The translations under genes and the position numbers were made by a program. This document shows positions 3,342 through 48,714 of a stretch of 64,000 bases of DNA, one piece after another (positions within the stretch are counted from its first letter, which is position 1; each line of letters starts with the position of its first letter). Below the pieces are notes generated by a model. It saw only the letters and a program-made list of their open reading frames with translations, did no database searches and had not been told where the DNA came from. The stretch comes from Botryllus schlosseri (Eukaryota): NCBI GenBank assembly GCA_051294905.1, contig CM119385.1:14756001-14820000 (forward strand), written 5' to 3'.

Positions 3342-4243
3342 ATGAGCGGTGAGTTAGCTTGTCTGATTTCGAAAATGGAATGGAGATTTGAATCTGTGAG
3401 CAATGACCTCTCAGGACTCACTCATCCTACTTTTACATTGATATCACGGCATATAACGTGTCGCTCTAACATTTGTATATTGATTATTGCACAGTTTTAC
3501 TCTTGGACCTGATAGAAAACGTTGCGAAGTTGGAAGAGTACAGAATTAAAGATCGAAAATCGGATTTCGGTACTGCACTGTCCGTGATTCACAGCCGGCT
3601 GCCTCGCGAGCCAGGCCTATCTCCTGACTTAATTCGCAACATTGTATTCAAGCTACTCCAAAATGAAGAGCAGATGTATCCGATAGGTGCCCTTCTCCTG
3701 AGCACAGCATCGTTTGATCTCGCCATGCAGGGCTCGTTGTGTAATGAAACGTTGCGCTTTGTTGATGGGATCGCGCATGATGTTCGGCATATAACAAAGA
3801 ACTTGCCGCCGACATGCAGTGGATTTGGCCGTCAGAAAGCATGGGAGTGTGGTACCGATCTTTTGAAAAGGATGAGCGATGGATTAGGCCACCGGTCGAG
3901 CAGTCCCGACGCTTTGAAAAGTCAGGCCAACTGTCTGGCAAATCTTAGTGACATCCATGCATCCGAAGGAAGTGCGGACGGAGCAATCGCATACGGCAAG
4001 GAAAGCATCGATCTACTCAACCGATATTCCGATAGACCCGAAAAAAGTCGGATTTATGGTTTCTCTCTGTACAATGTGGCTTGGGCGTATTATAGCAAAG
4101 GCGATAACGGCAAGTCGCTGAATTACTACTCGGAAGCATTAAGAGCATTCGAGAAAGCCATGGATATGCATGAAGATGACAAAAAAGAATGGATCCGTAA
4201 AACGCGGAGGGAATGGGACCGTGCACGTAACAACTCGAAATAG
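3342..4243 (+). CDS. Helical TPR-like protein; mini-exon 3342-3348 (ATG AGC G) spliced to exon 3495-4243
   Basis: GTGAGT donor at 3349 and TGCACAG acceptor ending at 3494 have matching phase 1. About 250 open codons. C-terminal ANCLANLSDIH...A..YG / GFSLYNVAWAYYSKGDNGKSLNYYSEALRAF is a TPR_12-type pattern. Confidence 0.65.
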
Positions 4244-9527: not shown

Positions 9528-9945
9528 ATGCATGTGTTTACTAGCTCTGTGACCGCAATCACAATTGCATTACTTGGAGCTGCGTTCGATATAAGCAGTT
9601 AACCGACAGACGTGCAAGTATAGATCTGCTTTGTACAAGATTCTACTTAGTCATTTGGGTTTTCTCATGCAAGGGTCACCGCAGCAGATCAGTGGTACGC
9701 GTAATAGTTGGCCTGGTGTTTTGCGCATGCCCTTCGTGCCGAAGCCCTATCCATTTCCTCGGGCTTTTGACCGATACTACAACGGATCTGATCTTCCGTG
9801 CTTGTGTGACATCGGCCGATACGATTCAAACCCAGGCCAATGCAAATTTCGAGGCCAATGATTTAGTTGCTGACTTACGGCGGCCGTCAATGCATGAATT
9901 GTACAAGCCGTGAACTGTGCATGTGTGCAGTCAATTAAATTACTC
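9528..9945 (+). pseudogene. Candidate decayed, intronless insulin-like peptide paralog
   Basis: Hydrophobic leader from ATG 9528, then after a frameshift C-x11-S(AGT), W..VLR, YPF...F, YY(TAC TAC)-NG-S(TCT)-x8-G(GGC)-x8-C. Five core Cys positions are single-base neighbours of Cys codons. Needs one codon gap and two frameshifts. Confidence 0.5.
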
Positions 9946-24195: not shown

Positions 24196-24754
24196 ATGAA
24201 TTATCGAAGAATGTCGATGGTATCTACTCTGACAGCCGCTGTGCTGATGCTAGCTATATTCGCCGTGGACGACACTTCGGCACACAGGTACAACGGGGTC
24301 TTCACCCACTGCGGGAGCGACGCGGAGCATTTCATGAAATGGTTTTGCAGAGATCCGAATTTCAGATTTCCATTCCCGTTCAACCGAATATACCGTAAGT
24401 AAATCAAGATTACGTCATTGATTTCGTGGTTGTTTCAGAGCATAGCGAATTTACTCTAAACATTTCACCATTTTCAGCACCAAATATGGCTGCGATTTGA
24501 TTCTCGAATCGAGAATACATATATGTGATCTTGTATTTTCAGTCATTCTCCGCTACGGACCTCCGCACAAAATACTCTTCCCGTATCAGCACCAGGCTTG
24601 GCATTGCTGCCGGATGGGCTGCGACGAATCGGGCTATCGGAAGATGTGTCATTATCACCGAAAATTAAAAGTATGCGAGAGACGCAGGAGGCATCTGCGC
24701 ATCAGCGGGCGAGCGAAGCGTTTCTATCAGAGCGCCTGCCTGCTGAAGAATTGA
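24196..24754 (+). CDS. ILP-A: divergent insulin-superfamily prepropeptide, 136 aa (exons 24196-24394 and 24543-24754)
   Basis: Hydrophobic signal peptide; B chain CGSDAEHFMKWFC (C-x11-C); phase-1 intron GTAAGT..TTTTCAG; A chain CCRMGCDESGYRKMC (CC-x3-C-x8-C). Spliced length 411 nt, open to TGA. Confidence 0.9.
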
Positions 24755-41887: not shown

Positions 41888-43521
41888 GTGTATAATCCAC
41901 AGCTGCAACACCAATGGGTTGCGGATTCGAGTCCGACCGCGAGGCCGAGTCCACAATTCCTATACCTAAGTGTTGGAGTTTTATCTAGGCTCCTCCTCGT
42001 CATCTCATCCACGTGAGCGGTGTTTTATAGAAAGCCTAGAAGGGTGCCATGCTATATGTCGGCAGCTGCGGAATGAAAGAAAATCGGCCTAGTGAAAATG
42101 ATCATGGTCGTCTAGACGTCTACAGACAGCATGAACACCAACAAACAAACAGAGAGACGGGACGACGACGACGGGACTTGAACCTTGCGTAGATGACGCC
42201 GACGCTCATCACTAGGCTGTCTCCTCCTCTACATGTCCTACGGTCCTACATCGTGAGCACTTTTAGTGGCAAAGTTAGTGGCAAAGTTCGCCATGCCTGA
42301 TGAAATTAAAAAATATATATATTTGGGTATGTTTACTGAAAATCGGTGTGACTTATGCTGTTGTTCCCTTTCCGCGAGGCCATGGGAGAAATGCGAGGCT
42401 TCACCTTAGAAGAAAGTGTAATCGTATTGTTCGGTCGAAACGCAGCATCGTGATACAAATTGCATATCGAGCTAATAAATACTGGATATAGAATCGGCAT
42501 TTCAAAAGGACGGGGTTGCGATTACGAACCCCAATCTCCCTAGCTTACGTCATTGCACACGGCGCATGTGCAACCCGCCAGGGATGCCTACGTCTATATG
42601 CTGAATCAAGTCATTGTTTAAACCTTGGAGTTTAGACAAACAAGCAAGTAGTTTAAATAAAACCCTGAAGATTACTCAAATTGTATAGTAAATGGGGATA
42701 GTGAATTAGTTAAATACCCTTAACGATTACTAGATATTATAACTTCTACAATAACGAATGAAGATATAACTATAATCATGCAGCAATTCTGGAGGATAGT
42801 CATGAAATTAGCTCGGGACTGAGTAGCTGCATATTGGAGTGGTCCTATTTCGCCTATACCCTAAACTAAACACACAACATCTTCTCTACAGATTCCGCGA
42901 CAGGAATGCCTCGCGTAAACTCGACAGCGACACTATGCGTAGCTGCGAATCCCGACTTTTCAACACACATTTCAAAGATTGTATATATGAAAAAACGTGT
43001 TCGAAAAGTCATTCCATTTAGCAGCATAAGAACAGATCATAATGAAGAACAGAAAGACGCATTCGAAACGCTGACCTAAGCGGAAATATATTTTATGACA
43101 CACTGGCGACTCTCCAGCACCAATTCACACTAACATTACAGGATAAATAAATATTACAAAAAGATGCACAGATATCACGGCAGTATTGTTAGTGAGTATG
43201 ATTTCAACGGGTATAAAAAATTGACGGCATAAAGTAGCGATAAGGTAATGGAAAATGTTGTAAATAACTTACAGATCTCCCGAGAAGGGAGTTTAAATAT
43301 TGTCATAAAAACACAGTGAACGATTACAGCGGTTGCCTGAAATAACGTTCAGAGGCTCTTTTTCTTATCAGAATAAGTCAAGTAGTATAAAGCATACGTT
43401 ACAGAGCACAGCATACTGCATTCGTGTATGAATCGAAATACTGTAGCCTGCTTGTTAACGTTATGCTTGGTAGTAAATCTGCAAAGTGGACGCCAGTAGT
43501 GGAATCCCCAATAGGGATGCC

Positions 43522-44096
43522 TTACAATTGATATTGTCGCAATATCTTGTGCGGTAGCCTGCGGAATTTGCCACCGGGTGTACTACGCTTTCCTCTGAAT
43601 CTGGATAGTCGGGTTGCGAACCCCTCAGAACTCATCTGATGCTCCGTACGTTGCACTAGACAACGGGCGTACATAATGCGACCGCGTTTGGTATGCATGT
43701 TCTCGCCCTTGGAGCAAGTGTGGTGCAATTTGTGGTAGTAACACATTTTGATGAATCCGACATGTTCGCAGCCTCGTTTGCAGCACATATGAAACCGGTT
43801 TTGGAACGGATACAGCCTCTCGTCAGGTGCGCGAGATCGCAATACCACTGTAAACAGTAATGTAAATATGAATGTTACAAACTCACACGAAAATAACCAG
43901 TACGCGTAAACTACTCACAATTCCATCTGAGTGTTTGGAAAGGATAGTGAAATGAGTCGTCGCGACAGATGAAACGCATGTCTTTGACAGCAAAAGGTTC
44001 GCATACGTGACTATATCTCCTAGAGTGACTGCAGTGACCGACAGAAAAGAGCATTACCACAGCCAGCAGGCGCAGAGCAGCGTCACTTGTATTCAT
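43522..44096 (-). CDS. ILP-B: divergent insulin-superfamily prepropeptide, 167 aa (exons 44096-43919 and 43847-43522)
   Basis: Signal peptide; B chain CEPFAVKDMRFIC; phase-1 intron GTGAGT..TTTACAG; A chain CCKRGCEHVGFIKMC; basic tail containing RGKR. Spliced length 504 nt, open. Confidence 0.88.
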
Positions 44097-44784
44097 CCCG
44101 TTACTAGCAATCAAGTATATACACTATATATGAAGGTAATTCTGTAAAAACAAAATTAGATTTATATTATTATTATTGTTGTTACAATTGCACTCGCTCG
44201 GTACCAGTTGGACTGGGGAAATTGTGTTCGGCGTTCAGGGTAAACCATTATTATGTACAGCACAACTAGCAGATCACATATACATTGAGATCGATCACAC
44301 AATTAAACACAAGTCTAGCAACCAACTTTTCGCATCTTTATAAAACACATACAAGCTGGTCTTCGTGTAGAAGAGACGCTCAGAATAGCACGAAAAAGGA
44401 CAATTTCAATGCTCTCGAACATAACGCGATATCACGGCGTTTCACAAAACCAACTCATCGGAGTGCGTCAAGTACATTCGACATCAGTAATGATTCGCAA
44501 ATCACGCGAATATTAAACTTTCTTGGCGCATACGCAAAGGATTATCGAAATTGCGTAAATCCAAAACGGCCATGCTACATTGCAAGGGCGGTACAAACTG
44601 ATCACTGATCAGTAAGAAGCAAAGGTAGTCAATAAAACTTTAATTCTCCAATACAAGCAGCTATGTATATATCACAAAGTATTTCCGATGAATATATATT
44701 TATTTAGCTGACACAAGTCCATAAATATAATGATTATGTGTTTTATCTTCATTTTGATGACTACTTTTAGCGCTTTCCCCACTT

Positions 44785-45062
44785 TCATTGCCGCTTCCCT
44801 TCTAAAATCCTCCTATGCTTCCCGTGCCTCCTGACTCCTTTTGCACGATCGGCTCTTTCATGTCGCGTAAGGCAATTCACTCGTATCCTGTACCTGGCTA
44901 CTCCGCTTGCTGCTTTTGAGCGGGCATCGCAGTGACTGTACCAGATTTGGTGCGGTCACATTTTGTGCAGCTCTTGTTCGTAGCAGCCTCGTTTGCAGCA
45001 ATTTCCGGCTTGGTGTTGGTACGGGTGAAGGTTGTGATCGGGCAGACAGTGGCGCTTGCAAA
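44785..45062 (-). pseudogene. Orphan duplicate of ILP-D exon 2 with in-frame TGA at the last A-chain Cys
   Basis: Same length as ILP-D exon 2 (278 nt) with an intact TATTACAG acceptor; reads CCKRGCYEQELHKM then TGA at 44958-44956 where ILP-D has TGC. No exon 1 of its own. Confidence 0.88.
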
Positions 45063-45149
45063 CTGTAATACAAAGTAAAGGGATAAACGAAACAGCACGC
45101 ACAGTACGAAAACAGTACTAAGACAGTAAATACGAACGTTCATACCATA

Positions 45150-45673
45150 TTATAAGTGAAAATTTATTGAAATCACAGTATATATATATGCGAACCCCTC
45201 TAAACGCATCAGATGCTCCGTACGTCCCACTAGACAACGAGCGTACAACATACGACCGCGTTTCGTATTCATGCTCTCGCCCTTGGAGCAAGTATCGTGC
45301 AATTTGTGGTAGTAACACATTTTGATGAATCCGACATGTACGCAGCCTCGTTTGCAGCACACATGAAACCGGTGTTGGAACGGATACATCCTCTCGTCAG
45401 GTGCGCGGGAACGCAATACCACTGTCAACAGGAATGTAAATATGAACGTTACAAACTCTCACGAAAATAACCAGTATGCGTAAAATACTCACAATTCCAT
45501 CTGGGGGTTTGGAAAGGATAGTGAAATGAGTCGTCGTTACAGATGAAACGCATGTTCTTGACAGCAGAAGGTTCGCATACGCGACTATATCTCCTGGAGT
45601 GACTGCAGTGACCGACAGAAAAGAGCATTGCCACAGCCAGCAGGCGCAGAACAGCGTCACTTGTATTCATCAT
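45150..45673 (-). CDS. ILP-C: recent paralog of ILP-B, 150 aa (exons 45673-45493 and 45421-45150), with a C-terminus derived from intron sequence
   Basis: B chain CEPSAVKNMRFIC; A chain CCKRGCVHVGFIKMC; phase-1 intron. Spliced length 453 nt, open; ends AYIYTVISINFHL past the duplication junction. Confidence 0.85.
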
Positions 45674-46352
45674 CTTACTAGCAATCAAGTATATACACTA
45701 TATATGAAGGTAGCTCTGTAAAAACAAAATTAGATATATACTTTTATTATTGTTGTTACAATTGCACTCGTTCGGTACCAGTTGGACTGGGGAAATTGTG
45801 TTTGGCGTTCAGGGTAAACCGCTATTATGTACAGCACACAGAACAGATGACATATACATTGAGATCACACAATTATGCAAAAGTCTAGCACTCGACTTTT
45901 CGCATCTTTAGAAAACACATTCAAGCTGGTCTTCATGTAGAAGAGACGATCAGAATAGCACGAAAAAGGACAATTTCAATTCTCTCGAACATAACACGAT
46001 ATCACTGTGTTTCACAAAATTAACTCCTCGGAGTGCGTCAAGTGCATTCGACACCAGAAATGATTCGCAAATCACGCGAATATTAAACTTTCTTGGCGCA
46101 TACGGAAAGGGTTATCGAAATTGCGGGAATCCAAAACAGCCATGCTACATTGCAAGGCAGTGCAAACTGATCAGTAAGAAGCAAAGGTATAGTCAATAAA
46201 ACTATAGTTCTCCAACACAAGCAGCTATGTTGTAGATAATAACAAAGTATTTCCGATAAATATATATTTCTTTAGCTGACACAAGTCCATAAAAATATTG
46301 GTTATGTGCTTTATCTTCATTTTGATGACTACTTTTACCGCTTTCTCCACTT

Positions 46353-47192
46353 TCATCGCCGCTCCCCACCTAAGATCATCCTGTGTCTCCCGTGCCTCCT
46401 GACTCCTTTTGCACGTTCGGCTCTCTCATGTCGCGTAAGGCAATTCGCTCGCATCCCGTACCTGGCTACTCCACTTGCTGCTTTAGAGCGGGCATCGCAA
46501 TGACTGTACCAAATTCGGTACGAGCACATTTTGTGCAATTCGTGTTCGTAGCAGCCTCGTTTGCAGCAATTGCCGGCTTGGTGTTGGAACGGGTAAAGCT
46601 TGGAATCGGGCAGGCGGTAGCGCTTGACGACTGTAATACAAAGTAAAGGGATAAACGAGACAGCACGCACAGTACGAAAACGGTACTTAGACAGTAAATA
46701 CGAATGTTCATGCCATATTTTAAGTGACAGTTTATTGAAGTCACAGTATACCAAAACTGTTAGAGATTGTCTGGAGCAGACAGACGCGTATTGTTAAAGT
46801 GTGGCTCCATACCATCTATATATCACTGGATAGAAGTACGACCAGACAGCTTTGAAGACAACGTTACGCACGTAGTATCGTAAATATGCTGAGAGATAAT
46901 GTCCATCGATATCTGATCAATCTAACCCTAATCGAGTTATCGCGATCGTGGTCGATGGTCGATGGATTCTACTTTTCTGGTATTAAAAAAAAATCGCATG
47001 CTACTTACTGTGGTCTCTGCTGAATTCGAATGGAAACTCAAACGCCGAATTTTCGCAAAACCACGCCAGGAACCGCCGCGCGTCATGTGAACACATAACG
47101 AAAGGCCGCATGCCGACTGATGATCCTGACACGCTGGACGCGAGGTAGAACAAAGCGACGGCAAATGCGCCCGCCTTAAATATATTTTTCAT
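46353..47192 (-). CDS. ILP-D: divergent insulin-superfamily prepropeptide, 153 aa (exons 47192-47009 and 46630-46353)
   Basis: Signal peptide MKNIFKAGAFAVALFYLASSVSG; B chain CSHDARRFLAWFC; phase-1 intron GTAAGT..TATTACAG; A chain CCKRGCYEHELHKMC. Spliced length 462 nt, open. Confidence 0.9.
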
Positions 47193-48714
47193 TTCTTGCG
47201 ATGAGTAATTTGACTCACAGATTTCCTGCGTAAAAAATATTCATTCCGTTACTCGAGGGTTTGATGAGGCATGTTCGGGGAAAACAAAGTCGCAATATTG
47301 CTTTTATTGACAGCTTGCCTTTCGTAATGAGGCTTACGACGCTCTACTTGCCAGCATAGCGCAGAAACTAGTGCTGTTACTAGACAGTTACTTGCAATGA
47401 AATTTACCCGCAAAATGCCTAATTCTACTACGTTTGAATCACTTATATAGGCACGGTATACCTATTGTTCTTCCTGTGCTTTTTTCGTGTCAATTTCTGT
47501 TCAAGATTTGGATGCGTTATTTGTCAAAAGGAGAGAAACCTTGGTGGCGCATGCATACCCGATGCCTATGCAGACTTGGAATTGATCAGCCACCCGGAAA
47601 TAGATTACTCTCTCATTATCCCAAGCCGTAGTTAAGCCTACCAGAATTCGGGAATACAATATTTTCTTAGGCAGACGGACGCATTTTTCTCAATTTTAAC
47701 ACATCATAATCAGGTAAGATCAAGTCCGAACCGGACTGTGGCCGTACGAACACCTTAGAAGATCGTGCATGAACTCATCGGTTTTGTTTTGATAATTGTA
47801 TTACTCATTTTAAGAGGTCTAAATAATTAGATTGGTTTAAGGAAGACGTGAAGGCTCACCCAATAACATTGCACCAAAGACCAACCGCAATGATGCTGTA
47901 AATGTGACAGTTCAGCAGTTCTGCATTGACGAATTCCGTTGTCCGGTATTTTCATCATTCCGGACATGTCACATATTCATCTGCTTCTGCAGAAAACCTT
48001 GGCAGCTATGTCAGGATCGACAGCGTAAAACTATATTTTTGAAAATATTGTCACACAAAATATTGTCAGGCTACATATAAACGGGCGGAACGCCAATAGA
48101 TAATATATTAATTTCAACATTAAATACGCGAGTCATCTCTAATTTGCCGTGGAAATCAAGATAACATTAAAATTTCATGGATCAAAAATCGCTGTAAATG
48201 TAGCAAATCATATAGTACCGCACAACTGATACTTTATTGCTACAGATGAAGAGATGAGAATCGGCATTATTTAAGACACCAATAAAAGTTTATAATTAAT
48301 TACGAGCAACGACAACGATCACAACGGCCCTCGTCGACTTCCGAAAACAGCCGACCAAGTTGAAATTACGACCCTACTTATACGTCACAATTCGTTCAGC
48401 TCATGCGAGCTAACCCAGATCCATTGACACCGTCACATATGATCTGTGATTCTTTCCGAACTATATTCGTCACTGGTCATTTCTGGCTTGTACTGTGAAA
48501 ACTTGTGCGCCCAGCGACTAAAAAGCTGCCACCAGGTGCGTTGACACTCCCAACTCCCACCCAATCACAGATTAGAAAGTTTCGTCCGATTCTCCACACC
48601 GGTACATTTGCAAACGTATCCTTTCGTGTGAAATATTTACCTAATCTGTCCGTTTGCACTTGAAGTAGGTAGAAGTGGCTTGGTTTCAGGTCGCATTAGT
48701 TCAGAATGTGGAAC

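What the first reader, a model, noticed from the sequence alone, without database searches (positions are those of the whole stretch)
24346..24604. Invariant 36-residue connector with a doubled aromatic-Pro-aromatic motif in place of a C-peptide
Seen: exactly 36 aa separate the second B-chain Cys from the first A-chain Cys in ILP-A, -B, -C and -D. Each has an F/Y-P-F motif early (FRFPF, FHYPF, FEFPF) and an F/Y-P-F/Y-Q motif late (LFPYQHQ, LYPFQNR, LYPFQHQ). Only ILP-D has a dibasic site (KR). Known: excised C-peptides are flanked by dibasic sites and vary in length, while IGFs stay single-chain. Inference: single-chain hormones whose connector is a conserved folded or binding element, possibly for oligomerisation or a non-canonical receptor.
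Basis: partly seen in the sequence, partly recalled or inferred. Interest (0 to 1): 0.72.

Follow-up and report, generated by a model that had tools for sequence, protein, structure and literature searches.

The report
Sea-squirt insulin-like genes, fixed-length connector
Four expressed genes in this sea-squirt window belong to an unnamed, sea-squirt-wide branch of the insulin family whose link between the B and A parts is as conserved as the hormone core and lacks the usual cutting sites, so the products probably stay single-chain like IGFs.

Summary
Window 24346-24604 runs from the second B-chain Cys codon of ILP-A to the base before the first A-chain Cys. After removing a 148-nt phase-1 intron it encodes exactly 36 residues. 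ILP-B, -C and -D also have 36 residues, with the intron at the same place. RNA reads confirm the introns of B, C and D.

The family extends beyond the window:
- Four more paralogs lie upstream on the same chromosome.
- Relatives occur in Styela, Ciona and Clavelina, all labelled "uncharacterized".
- 15 of 19 members with an interpretable length have a connector of exactly 36 residues. The other four have 37, 38, 38 and 42.
- Connector identity (0.38-0.48) matches or exceeds that of the A and B chains.
- AlphaFold models the connector as ordered.

The first motif (F-x-F-P-F) aligns with the B24-26 aromatic triplet of insulin/IGF. The last eight residues form the start of the A-chain helix. The true C-domain is therefore about 20 residues, not 36.

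Paired dibasic sites are absent. All members carry a fourth disulfide in a C-terminal extension, and some have a furin-type site in the tail. I read the family as IGF-like and single-chain. This is inferred, not shown.

The scan had already noted this family in the neighbouring window.

The parts
24196..24394 (+). ILP-A exon 1. It encodes the signal peptide, a pre-B segment, the B-chain helix (Cys codons 24310-24312 and 24346-24348), and connector residues 1-15 plus the first base of a split Leu codon.
   Evidence: ORF and motif scan; spliced model; family HMM 58 bits.
24395..24542 (+). ILP-A intron, 148 nt, phase 1, GTAAGT...TTTTCAG.
   Evidence: The same position and phase occur in B, C and D (RNA-confirmed), in E, F and H, and in Ciona.
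24543..24754 (+). ILP-A exon 2. It encodes connector residues 16-36, the A domain (CC at 24605), Cys7 (24674-24676), a basic loop, Cys8 (24737-24739) and the stop codon.
   Evidence: family HMM 81.6 bits.
24349..24604 (+). The 36-residue Cys-to-Cys connector of ILP-A, with the intron inside it. Positions 1-11 are the equivalent of the B-chain C-terminal segment and include F-x-F-P-F. Positions 12-28 are the middle of the C-domain. Positions 29-36 start the A-chain helix.
43522..44096 (-). ILP-B. Exon 1 is 44096-43919, the intron is 71 nt, and exon 2 is 43847-43522. The tail contains R-F-R-G-K-R-S.
   Evidence: RNA joint 43847/43919.
45150..45673 (-). ILP-C. Exon 1 is 45673-45493, the intron is 71 nt, and exon 2 starts at 45421. 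RNA shows a further splice from 45196 to 45062.
   Evidence: joints 45421/45493 and 45062/45196; translation.
44830..45062 (-). Duplicated copy of ILP-D exon 2 with TGA in place of the last A-chain Cys. ILP-C transcripts use it as a third exon in a different frame.
46353..47192 (-). ILP-D. Exon 1 is 47192-47009, the intron is 378 nt, and exon 2 is 46630-46353. The connector contains one KR.
   Evidence: joint 46630/47009 in three contig runs and in raw reads.

Best explanation
These genes encode secreted members of an ascidian-specific branch of the insulin superfamily, built like IGFs: signal peptide, B domain, a retained C domain, A domain, and a C-terminal extension.

The 36 residues between the second B-chain Cys and the first A-chain Cys fall into three parts:
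1. Positions 1-11 are equivalent to insulin B20-B30. The invariant Phe at position 5 sits where PheB24 sits, and F-x-F lies on the aromatic triplet.
2. Positions 12-28 are a fixed-length middle part. The model gives it a short helix (hydrophobic-L-R-Y) and a Pro-rich turn.
3. Positions 29-36 (P-F-Q-H-Q-A-x-x) extend the first A-chain helix by about one turn.

There is no pair of dibasic sites to excise a C-peptide, and the segment is as conserved as the hormone core. The chain therefore most likely stays intact, and the connector is part of the folded, functional protein.

After the A domain the second helix continues to a seventh Cys, placed exactly 8 residues after the last A-chain Cys. That Cys probably pairs with an eighth Cys 14-21 residues later across a very basic loop.

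Some paralogs carry a further tail after an R-x-R-G-K-R-S site, which would be removed like an IGF E-peptide.

Shown: gene structure, expression of B, C and D, conservation, and the cysteine pattern. Inferred: single-chain maturation, disulfide pairing, and hormone or growth-factor function through an insulin-receptor-type kinase.
For: - Cysteine framework C-x11-C ... CC-x3-C-x8-C, plus two extra conserved Cys, in all 8 genomic copies and nearly all relatives.
- Phase-1 intron at the same connector codon in this genome and in Ciona.
- Spliced, SL-trans-spliced mRNAs for B, C and D.
- A profile search of 1.84 billion proteins finds 11 relatives. All those with a name are ascidian.
- 15 of 19 members have a connector of 36 residues, and paired dibasic sites are lacking.
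- Connector identity equals or exceeds that of the chains.
- AlphaFold pLDDT for the connector is 83-95 in two models.
- The family profile against PDB sequences hits almost only IGF-II, IGF-I, INSL3 and relaxin. It aligns F-x-F to the F-Y-F of IGF-II.
- The best Foldseek PDB matches of the mature model are single-chain insulins and IGFs, with TM by target 0.51-0.62. The AFDB rows are insulin-family.
- A canonical insulin gene elsewhere in the same genome keeps basic cleavage sites before its A chain. Cleavage signals are therefore retained where they are used.
Against: - No peptide-level data exist.
- Pfam Insulin (PF00049) reaches its cutoff in only 1 of 10 relatives tested.
- All structural matches have weak E-values (0.35-9), and the Foldseek-independent PDB search found no insulin.
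- A basic residue at connector position 25 or 26 is nearly conserved. Several members have one dibasic pair there, so a single nick is possible.
- The alignment behind the models is shallow (10 and 27 rows, many of them fragments).
- ILP-A itself was not checked against RNA reads.
Confidence: 0.6

Rival explanations
1. The precursors are processed into two chains. Either a single nick occurs at the nearly conserved basic residue at connector position 25/26 (P-x-x-K/R before L-Y-P-F), or cleavage occurs at non-canonical sites. On this reading the connector is conserved because it guides folding or is itself a released peptide.
For: Basic residues at positions 24-26 occur in almost all members. 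RK, RR or KR occurs there in E, P0001, P0003, P0004, P0006 and Ciona P0008. Ciona has two dibasic pairs.
Against: Most members have no dibasic pair, and none has pairs at both ends of the C-domain. The basic residue follows prolines. The whole segment is modelled as packed and ordered. Conservation is highest right where a C-peptide would be most variable.
Confidence: 0.25
2. The insulin fold has been re-used for a non-hormonal secreted protein, for example a very basic defence, reproductive or matrix-binding factor. The tandem expansion would then reflect that role rather than endocrine signalling.
For: There is a local array of at least 8 copies with ongoing duplication and exon shuffling. 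The C-terminal loop and tail are extremely basic. There is a weak profile hit of the Cys7-Cys8 region to a CRISP cysteine-rich domain (E 0.1).
Against: The equivalents of receptor-contact elements (the aromatic triplet and the A-chain N-terminal helix) are among the best conserved parts. The family is old and shared by distant ascidians, with one copy in Ciona. That pattern is unlike fast-evolving defence genes.
Confidence: 0.1
3. The pattern is an artefact: pseudogenes or chance ORFs whose apparent 36-residue spacing comes from chosen splice sites.
For: Splice sites of A, E, F, G and H are predicted only. One duplicated exon in the window is indeed a pseudo-exon with a stop.
Against: RNA joints match the predicted introns of B, C and D exactly. 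Independent RefSeq models and transcript contigs from other species give the same spacing. Family HMM scores reach 91 bits.
Confidence: 0.02

Closest known systems
Vertebrate IGF-I / IGF-II (single-chain B-C-A-D, E-peptide removed by furin-type cleavage)
   Same: The chain is single with a retained C domain and no paired dibasic sites. The aromatic triplet after the second B Cys aligns. There is an extension after the A domain. Some paralogs have a basic R-x-x-K-R site before a disposable tail. The best PDB fold matches include IGF-II and IGF-I.
   Different: The Cys-to-Cys connector is 36 residues, against 28 in IGF-I and 24 in IGF-II (from the known sequences, from memory). It is strongly conserved and modelled as ordered, with its own short helix. 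The D-like extension is long, helical and carries two extra cysteines. Pfam does not recognise most members.
Proinsulin / relaxin-type two-chain hormones
   Same: They share the six-cysteine framework, the CG start of the B helix, and the intron inside the connecting region.
   Different: There are no dibasic sites at the B/C and C/A borders. There is no relaxin R-x-x-x-R-x-x-I/V motif in the B helix. The connector is conserved, whereas C-peptides vary.
The three published Ciona insulin-relaxin-like genes (Olinski et al. 2006), described as ILP, relaxin-like and IGF-like in the review PMC12702675
   Same: They come from the same animal group and the same superfamily, and one is called IGF-like.
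   Different: I could not obtain their sequences. The Ciona member of this family (LOC100177666 / F6RUP4) is labelled uncharacterized, has no named deposit in its 90% cluster, and has no second insulin-type gene within 10 kb. Identity with one of the three is therefore unlikely but not excluded.
Eight-cysteine invertebrate insulins (molluscan MIPs, nematode beta-type, echinoderm octinsulin)
   Same: They have four disulfides instead of three.
   Different: From memory, in those the extra pair links the B-chain N-terminus and the A chain. Here both extra cysteines lie after the A domain.

Membership tests
Insulin/IGF/relaxin superfamily | Six-cysteine framework C-x11-C ... CC-x3-C-x8-C | tested here: met
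   Present in all four window genes, in four further paralogs and in all 12 relatives.
Insulin/IGF/relaxin superfamily | Score above the Pfam PF00049 gathering cutoff | tested here: inconclusive
   Only P0011 reaches it (23.1 against 23.0 bits). Nine other relatives and the window exons give no hit. The family profile against PDB sequences gives E 0.09-3.7, almost only to IGFs, INSL3 and relaxins.
Insulin/IGF/relaxin superfamily | Three-helix insulin fold | tested here: inconclusive
   AlphaFold models (pLDDT 85 and 83) have the B helix and two A helices in the expected order. Top Foldseek rows are single-chain insulins, IGFs and relaxins with TM by target 0.5-0.69 but E 0.35-9. The wide VIA search found none.
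Insulin/IGF/relaxin superfamily | Secreted precursor with an N-terminal signal peptide | tested here: met
   Judged by reading the sequences only: every member has a hydrophobic N-terminal stretch of 15-25 residues. No signal-peptide predictor was available.
Insulin/IGF/relaxin superfamily | Intron inside the connecting-peptide coding region (family trait recalled from memory) | tested here: met
   A phase-1 intron follows connector residue 15 in A-F and H. RNA proves it for B, C and D. Ciona has the same.
IGF-type single-chain ligands | No paired dibasic cleavage sites flanking the C domain | tested here: met
   Each connector has zero or one dibasic pair. Only Ciona has two, and they lie six residues apart.
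IGF-type single-chain ligands | D/E-type extension after the A domain | tested here: met
   All members continue 20-70 residues beyond the last A-chain Cys. R-x-R-G-K-R-S occurs in B, P0002 and P0003.
IGF-type single-chain ligands | Mature protein retains the C domain | not testable with these tools
   This needs mass spectrometry of the secreted product.
IGF-type single-chain ligands | Signals through an insulin/IGF receptor tyrosine kinase | not tested
   No receptor analysis or binding prediction was done.
Proinsulin-type two-chain hormones | Dibasic sites at both the B/C and the C/A junction | tested here: not met
   By contrast, the canonical insulin gene of the same genome (L012) has KR and RVRR before its A chain.
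Relaxin-type peptides | R-x-x-x-R-x-x-I/V motif in the B helix | tested here: not met
   The B helices read C-G-x-x-A-x-x-F-L-x-W-F-C. There are no conserved arginines in the relaxin register.

The most novel reading that the evidence does not exclude
The conserved connector folds onto the insulin core as a third sub-domain and holds the B24-like aromatic strand in place. These ligands could then not open up the way insulin and IGF do on their receptor, and would use a different binding mode or a different receptor. [quoted passage not shown]
Probability: 0.15. Interest if true: 0.75.

Novelty: new variant of a known kind. Interest (0 to 1): 0.52.

Why it matters
[quoted passage not shown] This window shows a separate branch that domain databases do not recognise. 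It is shared by distant ascidians and expanded to at least eight copies in this genome.

Two features set it apart from typical C-peptides: a constrained connector and a fourth disulfide.

It gives a natural test case for how much structure the C domain of a single-chain insulin-like ligand can carry. It also adds genes that must be included in any account of insulin/IGF evolution at the origin of vertebrates.

Tried and rejected
- The word-indexed homology search with exon 2 of ILP-B found nothing. With the family alignment it added only one sequence.
- Pfam on single exons found nothing.
- The ESM Atlas feature search gave only weak insulin-flavoured leads. The Atlas shape search gave relaxin-3-like rows at TM 0.37.
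- The Foldseek-independent PDB search gave no insulin match. Two-chain insulins are split into short chains in that library, which probably explains this.
- Region-wise dN/dS among paralogs was uninformative because synonymous sites are saturated. It shows only that connector pN (0.2-0.5) is similar to that of the chains.
- The family tree is largely unresolved. Only B/C+P0002(+P0003), G+H and P0009+P0011 are supported.
- I could not read Olinski 2006 or Thompson & Di Gregorio 2015 (not held). Text searches for gene names and accessions found nothing. Identity of the Ciona member with a published INS-L gene therefore remains unchecked.
- The neighbouring note of a fifth intronless paralog at 9528-9945 got no support from the family HMM at E <= 10.
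- No dimer or receptor complex prediction was run, because the report makes no binding claim.

Full report
**What is at the coordinates**

The window is eukaryotic DNA, about 41% G+C, with no N. At 24196 an ORF begins with a hydrophobic leader and a C-x11-C motif, and ends at a GTAAGT donor. After 148 nt a TTTTCAG acceptor opens a second ORF with CC-x3-C-x8-C.

Once the intron is removed, 36 codons separate the two cysteines: 15, a split Leu codon, then 20.

Three more genes lie on the minus strand at 43.5-47.2 kb. They have the same framework, the same 15+1+20 layout and a phase-1 intron. The quoted motifs are present. Only ILP-D has a dibasic pair among the four.

**Expression and splicing**

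I laid one raw RNA-seq run and three contig runs on 43400-47400. Joints with GT..AG ends on the minus strand match the predicted introns of B (71 nt), C (71 nt) and D (378 nt) exactly.

The same non-genomic leader is attached at acceptors upstream of all three start codons. Its 22-nt core has 426 copies across the genome against 0 for a reversed control. In two of three copies examined it is followed by AG|GT. This is spliced-leader trans-splicing.

Its junction is inferred from consensus sites and from the identical junction in its Styela ortholog.

**The family**

The word-indexed search found nothing, and Pfam does not recognise the separate exons.

A profile of the four exon-2 translations was searched against 1.84 billion representatives. 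It returned 11 proteins, E 1e-22 to 7e-4. Those with names come from Styela clava (two loci), Ciona intestinalis and Clavelina lepadiformis. All are "uncharacterized" or unnamed, and the rest are transcript contigs. Given these hits and the trans-splicing, the window comes from an ascidian. It is not one of those three species, because identities are only 50-67%.

In the window's own genome the profile finds four more paralogs within 135 kb upstream on the same chromosome, and a weak one elsewhere. A canonical Pfam-positive insulin gene lies on another chromosome and has basic cleavage sites before its A chain.

**Connector length and conservation**

With consensus splice sites, E, F and H give 36 residues and G gives 38.

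Among the relatives:
- Eight have 36, Ciona included.
- One (P0007) appears longer because an in-frame intron was retained.
- Three divergent ones have 37, 38 and 42.

In total 15 of 19 members with an interpretable length have exactly 36. The Ciona gene has its intron at the same codon and phase.

In the 14 members that align without gaps, mean pairwise identity over non-Cys columns is as follows:

| Region | Mean pairwise identity |
|---|---|
| B chain | 0.34 |
| Connector positions 1-15 | 0.38 |
| Connector positions 17-36 | 0.48 |
| A chain | 0.41 |

Excised C-peptides are usually the least conserved part of a precursor. The connector here does not behave like one.

**What the 36 residues correspond to**

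The family profile was searched against PDB sequences. Its weak hits (E 0.09-3.7) are almost all IGF-II, IGF-I, INSL3 and relaxin chains. The IGF-II alignment places the family's C-x-D-x-x-F-x-F-P-F on C-G-D-R-G-F-Y-F-S-R.

The invariant Phe at connector position 5 is therefore the counterpart of PheB24 (Phe26 in IGF-II).

In both AlphaFold models the helix carrying the two adjacent A-chain cysteines starts eight residues before them, at the P of Y-P-F. The second motif thus caps and extends the first A-chain helix.

By homology, positions 1-11 equal B20-B30 and the last five equal A1-A5. The true C domain is about 20 residues. This compares with 12 in IGF-I, 8 in IGF-II and 35 (with flanking basic pairs) in human proinsulin, all from memory of the known sequences. 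The middle part is modelled with a short helix over the hydrophobic-L-R-Y stretch, followed by a Pro-rich turn.

**Fold evidence**

The Styela ortholog of ILP-A was modelled twice.

| Model | Alignment rows | pLDDT | pTM | Connector block pLDDT |
|---|---|---|---|---|
| Full length | 10 | 85 | 0.65 | 89-95 |
| Mature part | 27 | 83 | 0.72 | 83-94 |

Foldseek against the PDB ranks single-chain insulin analogues, mini-proinsulin, IGF-II and IGF-I at the top for the mature model. TM by target is 0.51-0.62, but E is only 3.7-9.

AlphaFold DB searches list INSL5, nematode and cone-snail insulins and relaxins (TM by hit up to 0.69). The Ciona family member is the only significant match, at E 6e-6. 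The Foldseek-independent search found no insulin.

Fold evidence is therefore consistent with an insulin fold but not decisive on its own. Membership in the superfamily rests mainly on the cysteine framework, the intron position and the profile alignments.

**Features beyond the connector**

All members continue past the A domain. A seventh Cys sits exactly 8 residues after the last A-chain Cys (7 in paralog H, absent in P0006). An eighth follows 14-21 residues later, across a very basic loop with a recurrent T-K/R-x-G-R motif. The model runs the second A helix straight through Cys7.

ILP-B, P0002 and P0003 share R-x-R-G-K-R-S further downstream. This is a furin-type site that would remove a tail, as in IGF E-peptides.

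**Cleavage**

Most connectors have no dibasic pair. Several have one at positions 24-26. Only Ciona has two, six residues apart. Excision of a C-peptide as in proinsulin is therefore unlikely. A single nick at the nearly conserved basic residue before L-Y-P-F cannot be excluded.

I put single-chain maturation at about 0.6 and a nicked or two-chain form at about 0.25.

**Literature**

Reviews from 2025 list three Ciona genes (ILP, relaxin-like, IGF-like; Olinski 2006). They state that tunicate ILP functions are unknown (PMC12702675), and a large 2025 phylogeny used three tunicate ligands (PMC12796670). I could not obtain the Olinski sequences.

The Ciona member here carries no name, has no named deposit in its cluster, and has no second insulin-type gene within 10 kb. 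It is therefore probably not one of the three, but this stays open.

**Earlier notes of this scan**

My results were obtained independently and agree.

**Verdict**

The single-chain, structured-connector reading is the best available. However, about 16 of the 36 residues are ordinary B- and A-domain segments. Oligomerisation and receptor choice remain untested.

I met no N stretches and no refusals, and the reads call used 4001 letters.

Noticed in passing
window 44143, 45717, 47227 (minus-strand acceptors); L015, L017: The mRNAs of ILP-B, -C and -D carry the same trans-spliced leader. Its 22-nt core (ATTGGAGTATTTGGTTGTATTA, then AG) is absent from the window but has 426 dispersed genomic copies. 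In two of three copies examined it is followed by a GT donor. The reads also show what looks like a template-switch oligo end before it.
   Followed up: partly
window 44830-45196, minus strand: A tandem duplication of about 1.57 kb copied ILP-D exon 2 behind ILP-C. The copy has TGA in place of the last A-chain Cys. Even so, ILP-C transcripts splice from 45196 into it at 45062 in another frame, giving a new Pro/Ser/Arg-rich tail of about 70 residues.
   Followed up: partly
window 43847 joined to 45493, minus strand: RNA joints link ILP-C exon 1 to ILP-B exon 2, skipping 1645 nt. One contig run shows this at depth 217 and the raw run has 9 reads. This is either read-through splicing or a haplotype that lacks the duplication. 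The product is an intact in-frame ILP.
   Followed up: no
window 9528-9945: Another first-reader note calls this a fifth, intronless ILP with erased cysteines. The family HMM finds nothing there at E <= 10. A short signal-peptide-like ORF and a P-Y-P-F-P stretch are all that resemble the family.
   Followed up: partly
window 3473-4243, plus strand: A 256-residue ORF with tetratricopeptide repeats (TPR_12 at its Pfam cutoff). It is probably an exon of an unrelated gene.
   Followed up: no
P0001 and P0004 (Styela clava LOC120341590 isoforms X1 and X2): Two 'isoforms' of one annotated locus differ over the whole mature protein. They are more likely tandem paralogs joined by shared or read-through exons, as seen here for C and B.
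   Followed up: no
P0007; L007 1418-1495: The apparent long connector of P0007 is a retained intron that happens to be in frame. The orthologous intron of paralog F is also open in frame.
   Followed up: partly
G000 C6:7862768-7863163 (L012) and C10:2556613-2556762 (L013): These are canonical, Pfam-positive insulin-type loci of the same genome. L012 has a long C-peptide region and KR / RVRR before the A chain.
   Followed up: partly
family profile positions 101-130 (Cys after the A chain to Cys8): Weak profile hit (E 0.1) of the post-A region to the cysteine-rich domain of CRISP-2. This is possibly chance.
   Followed up: no
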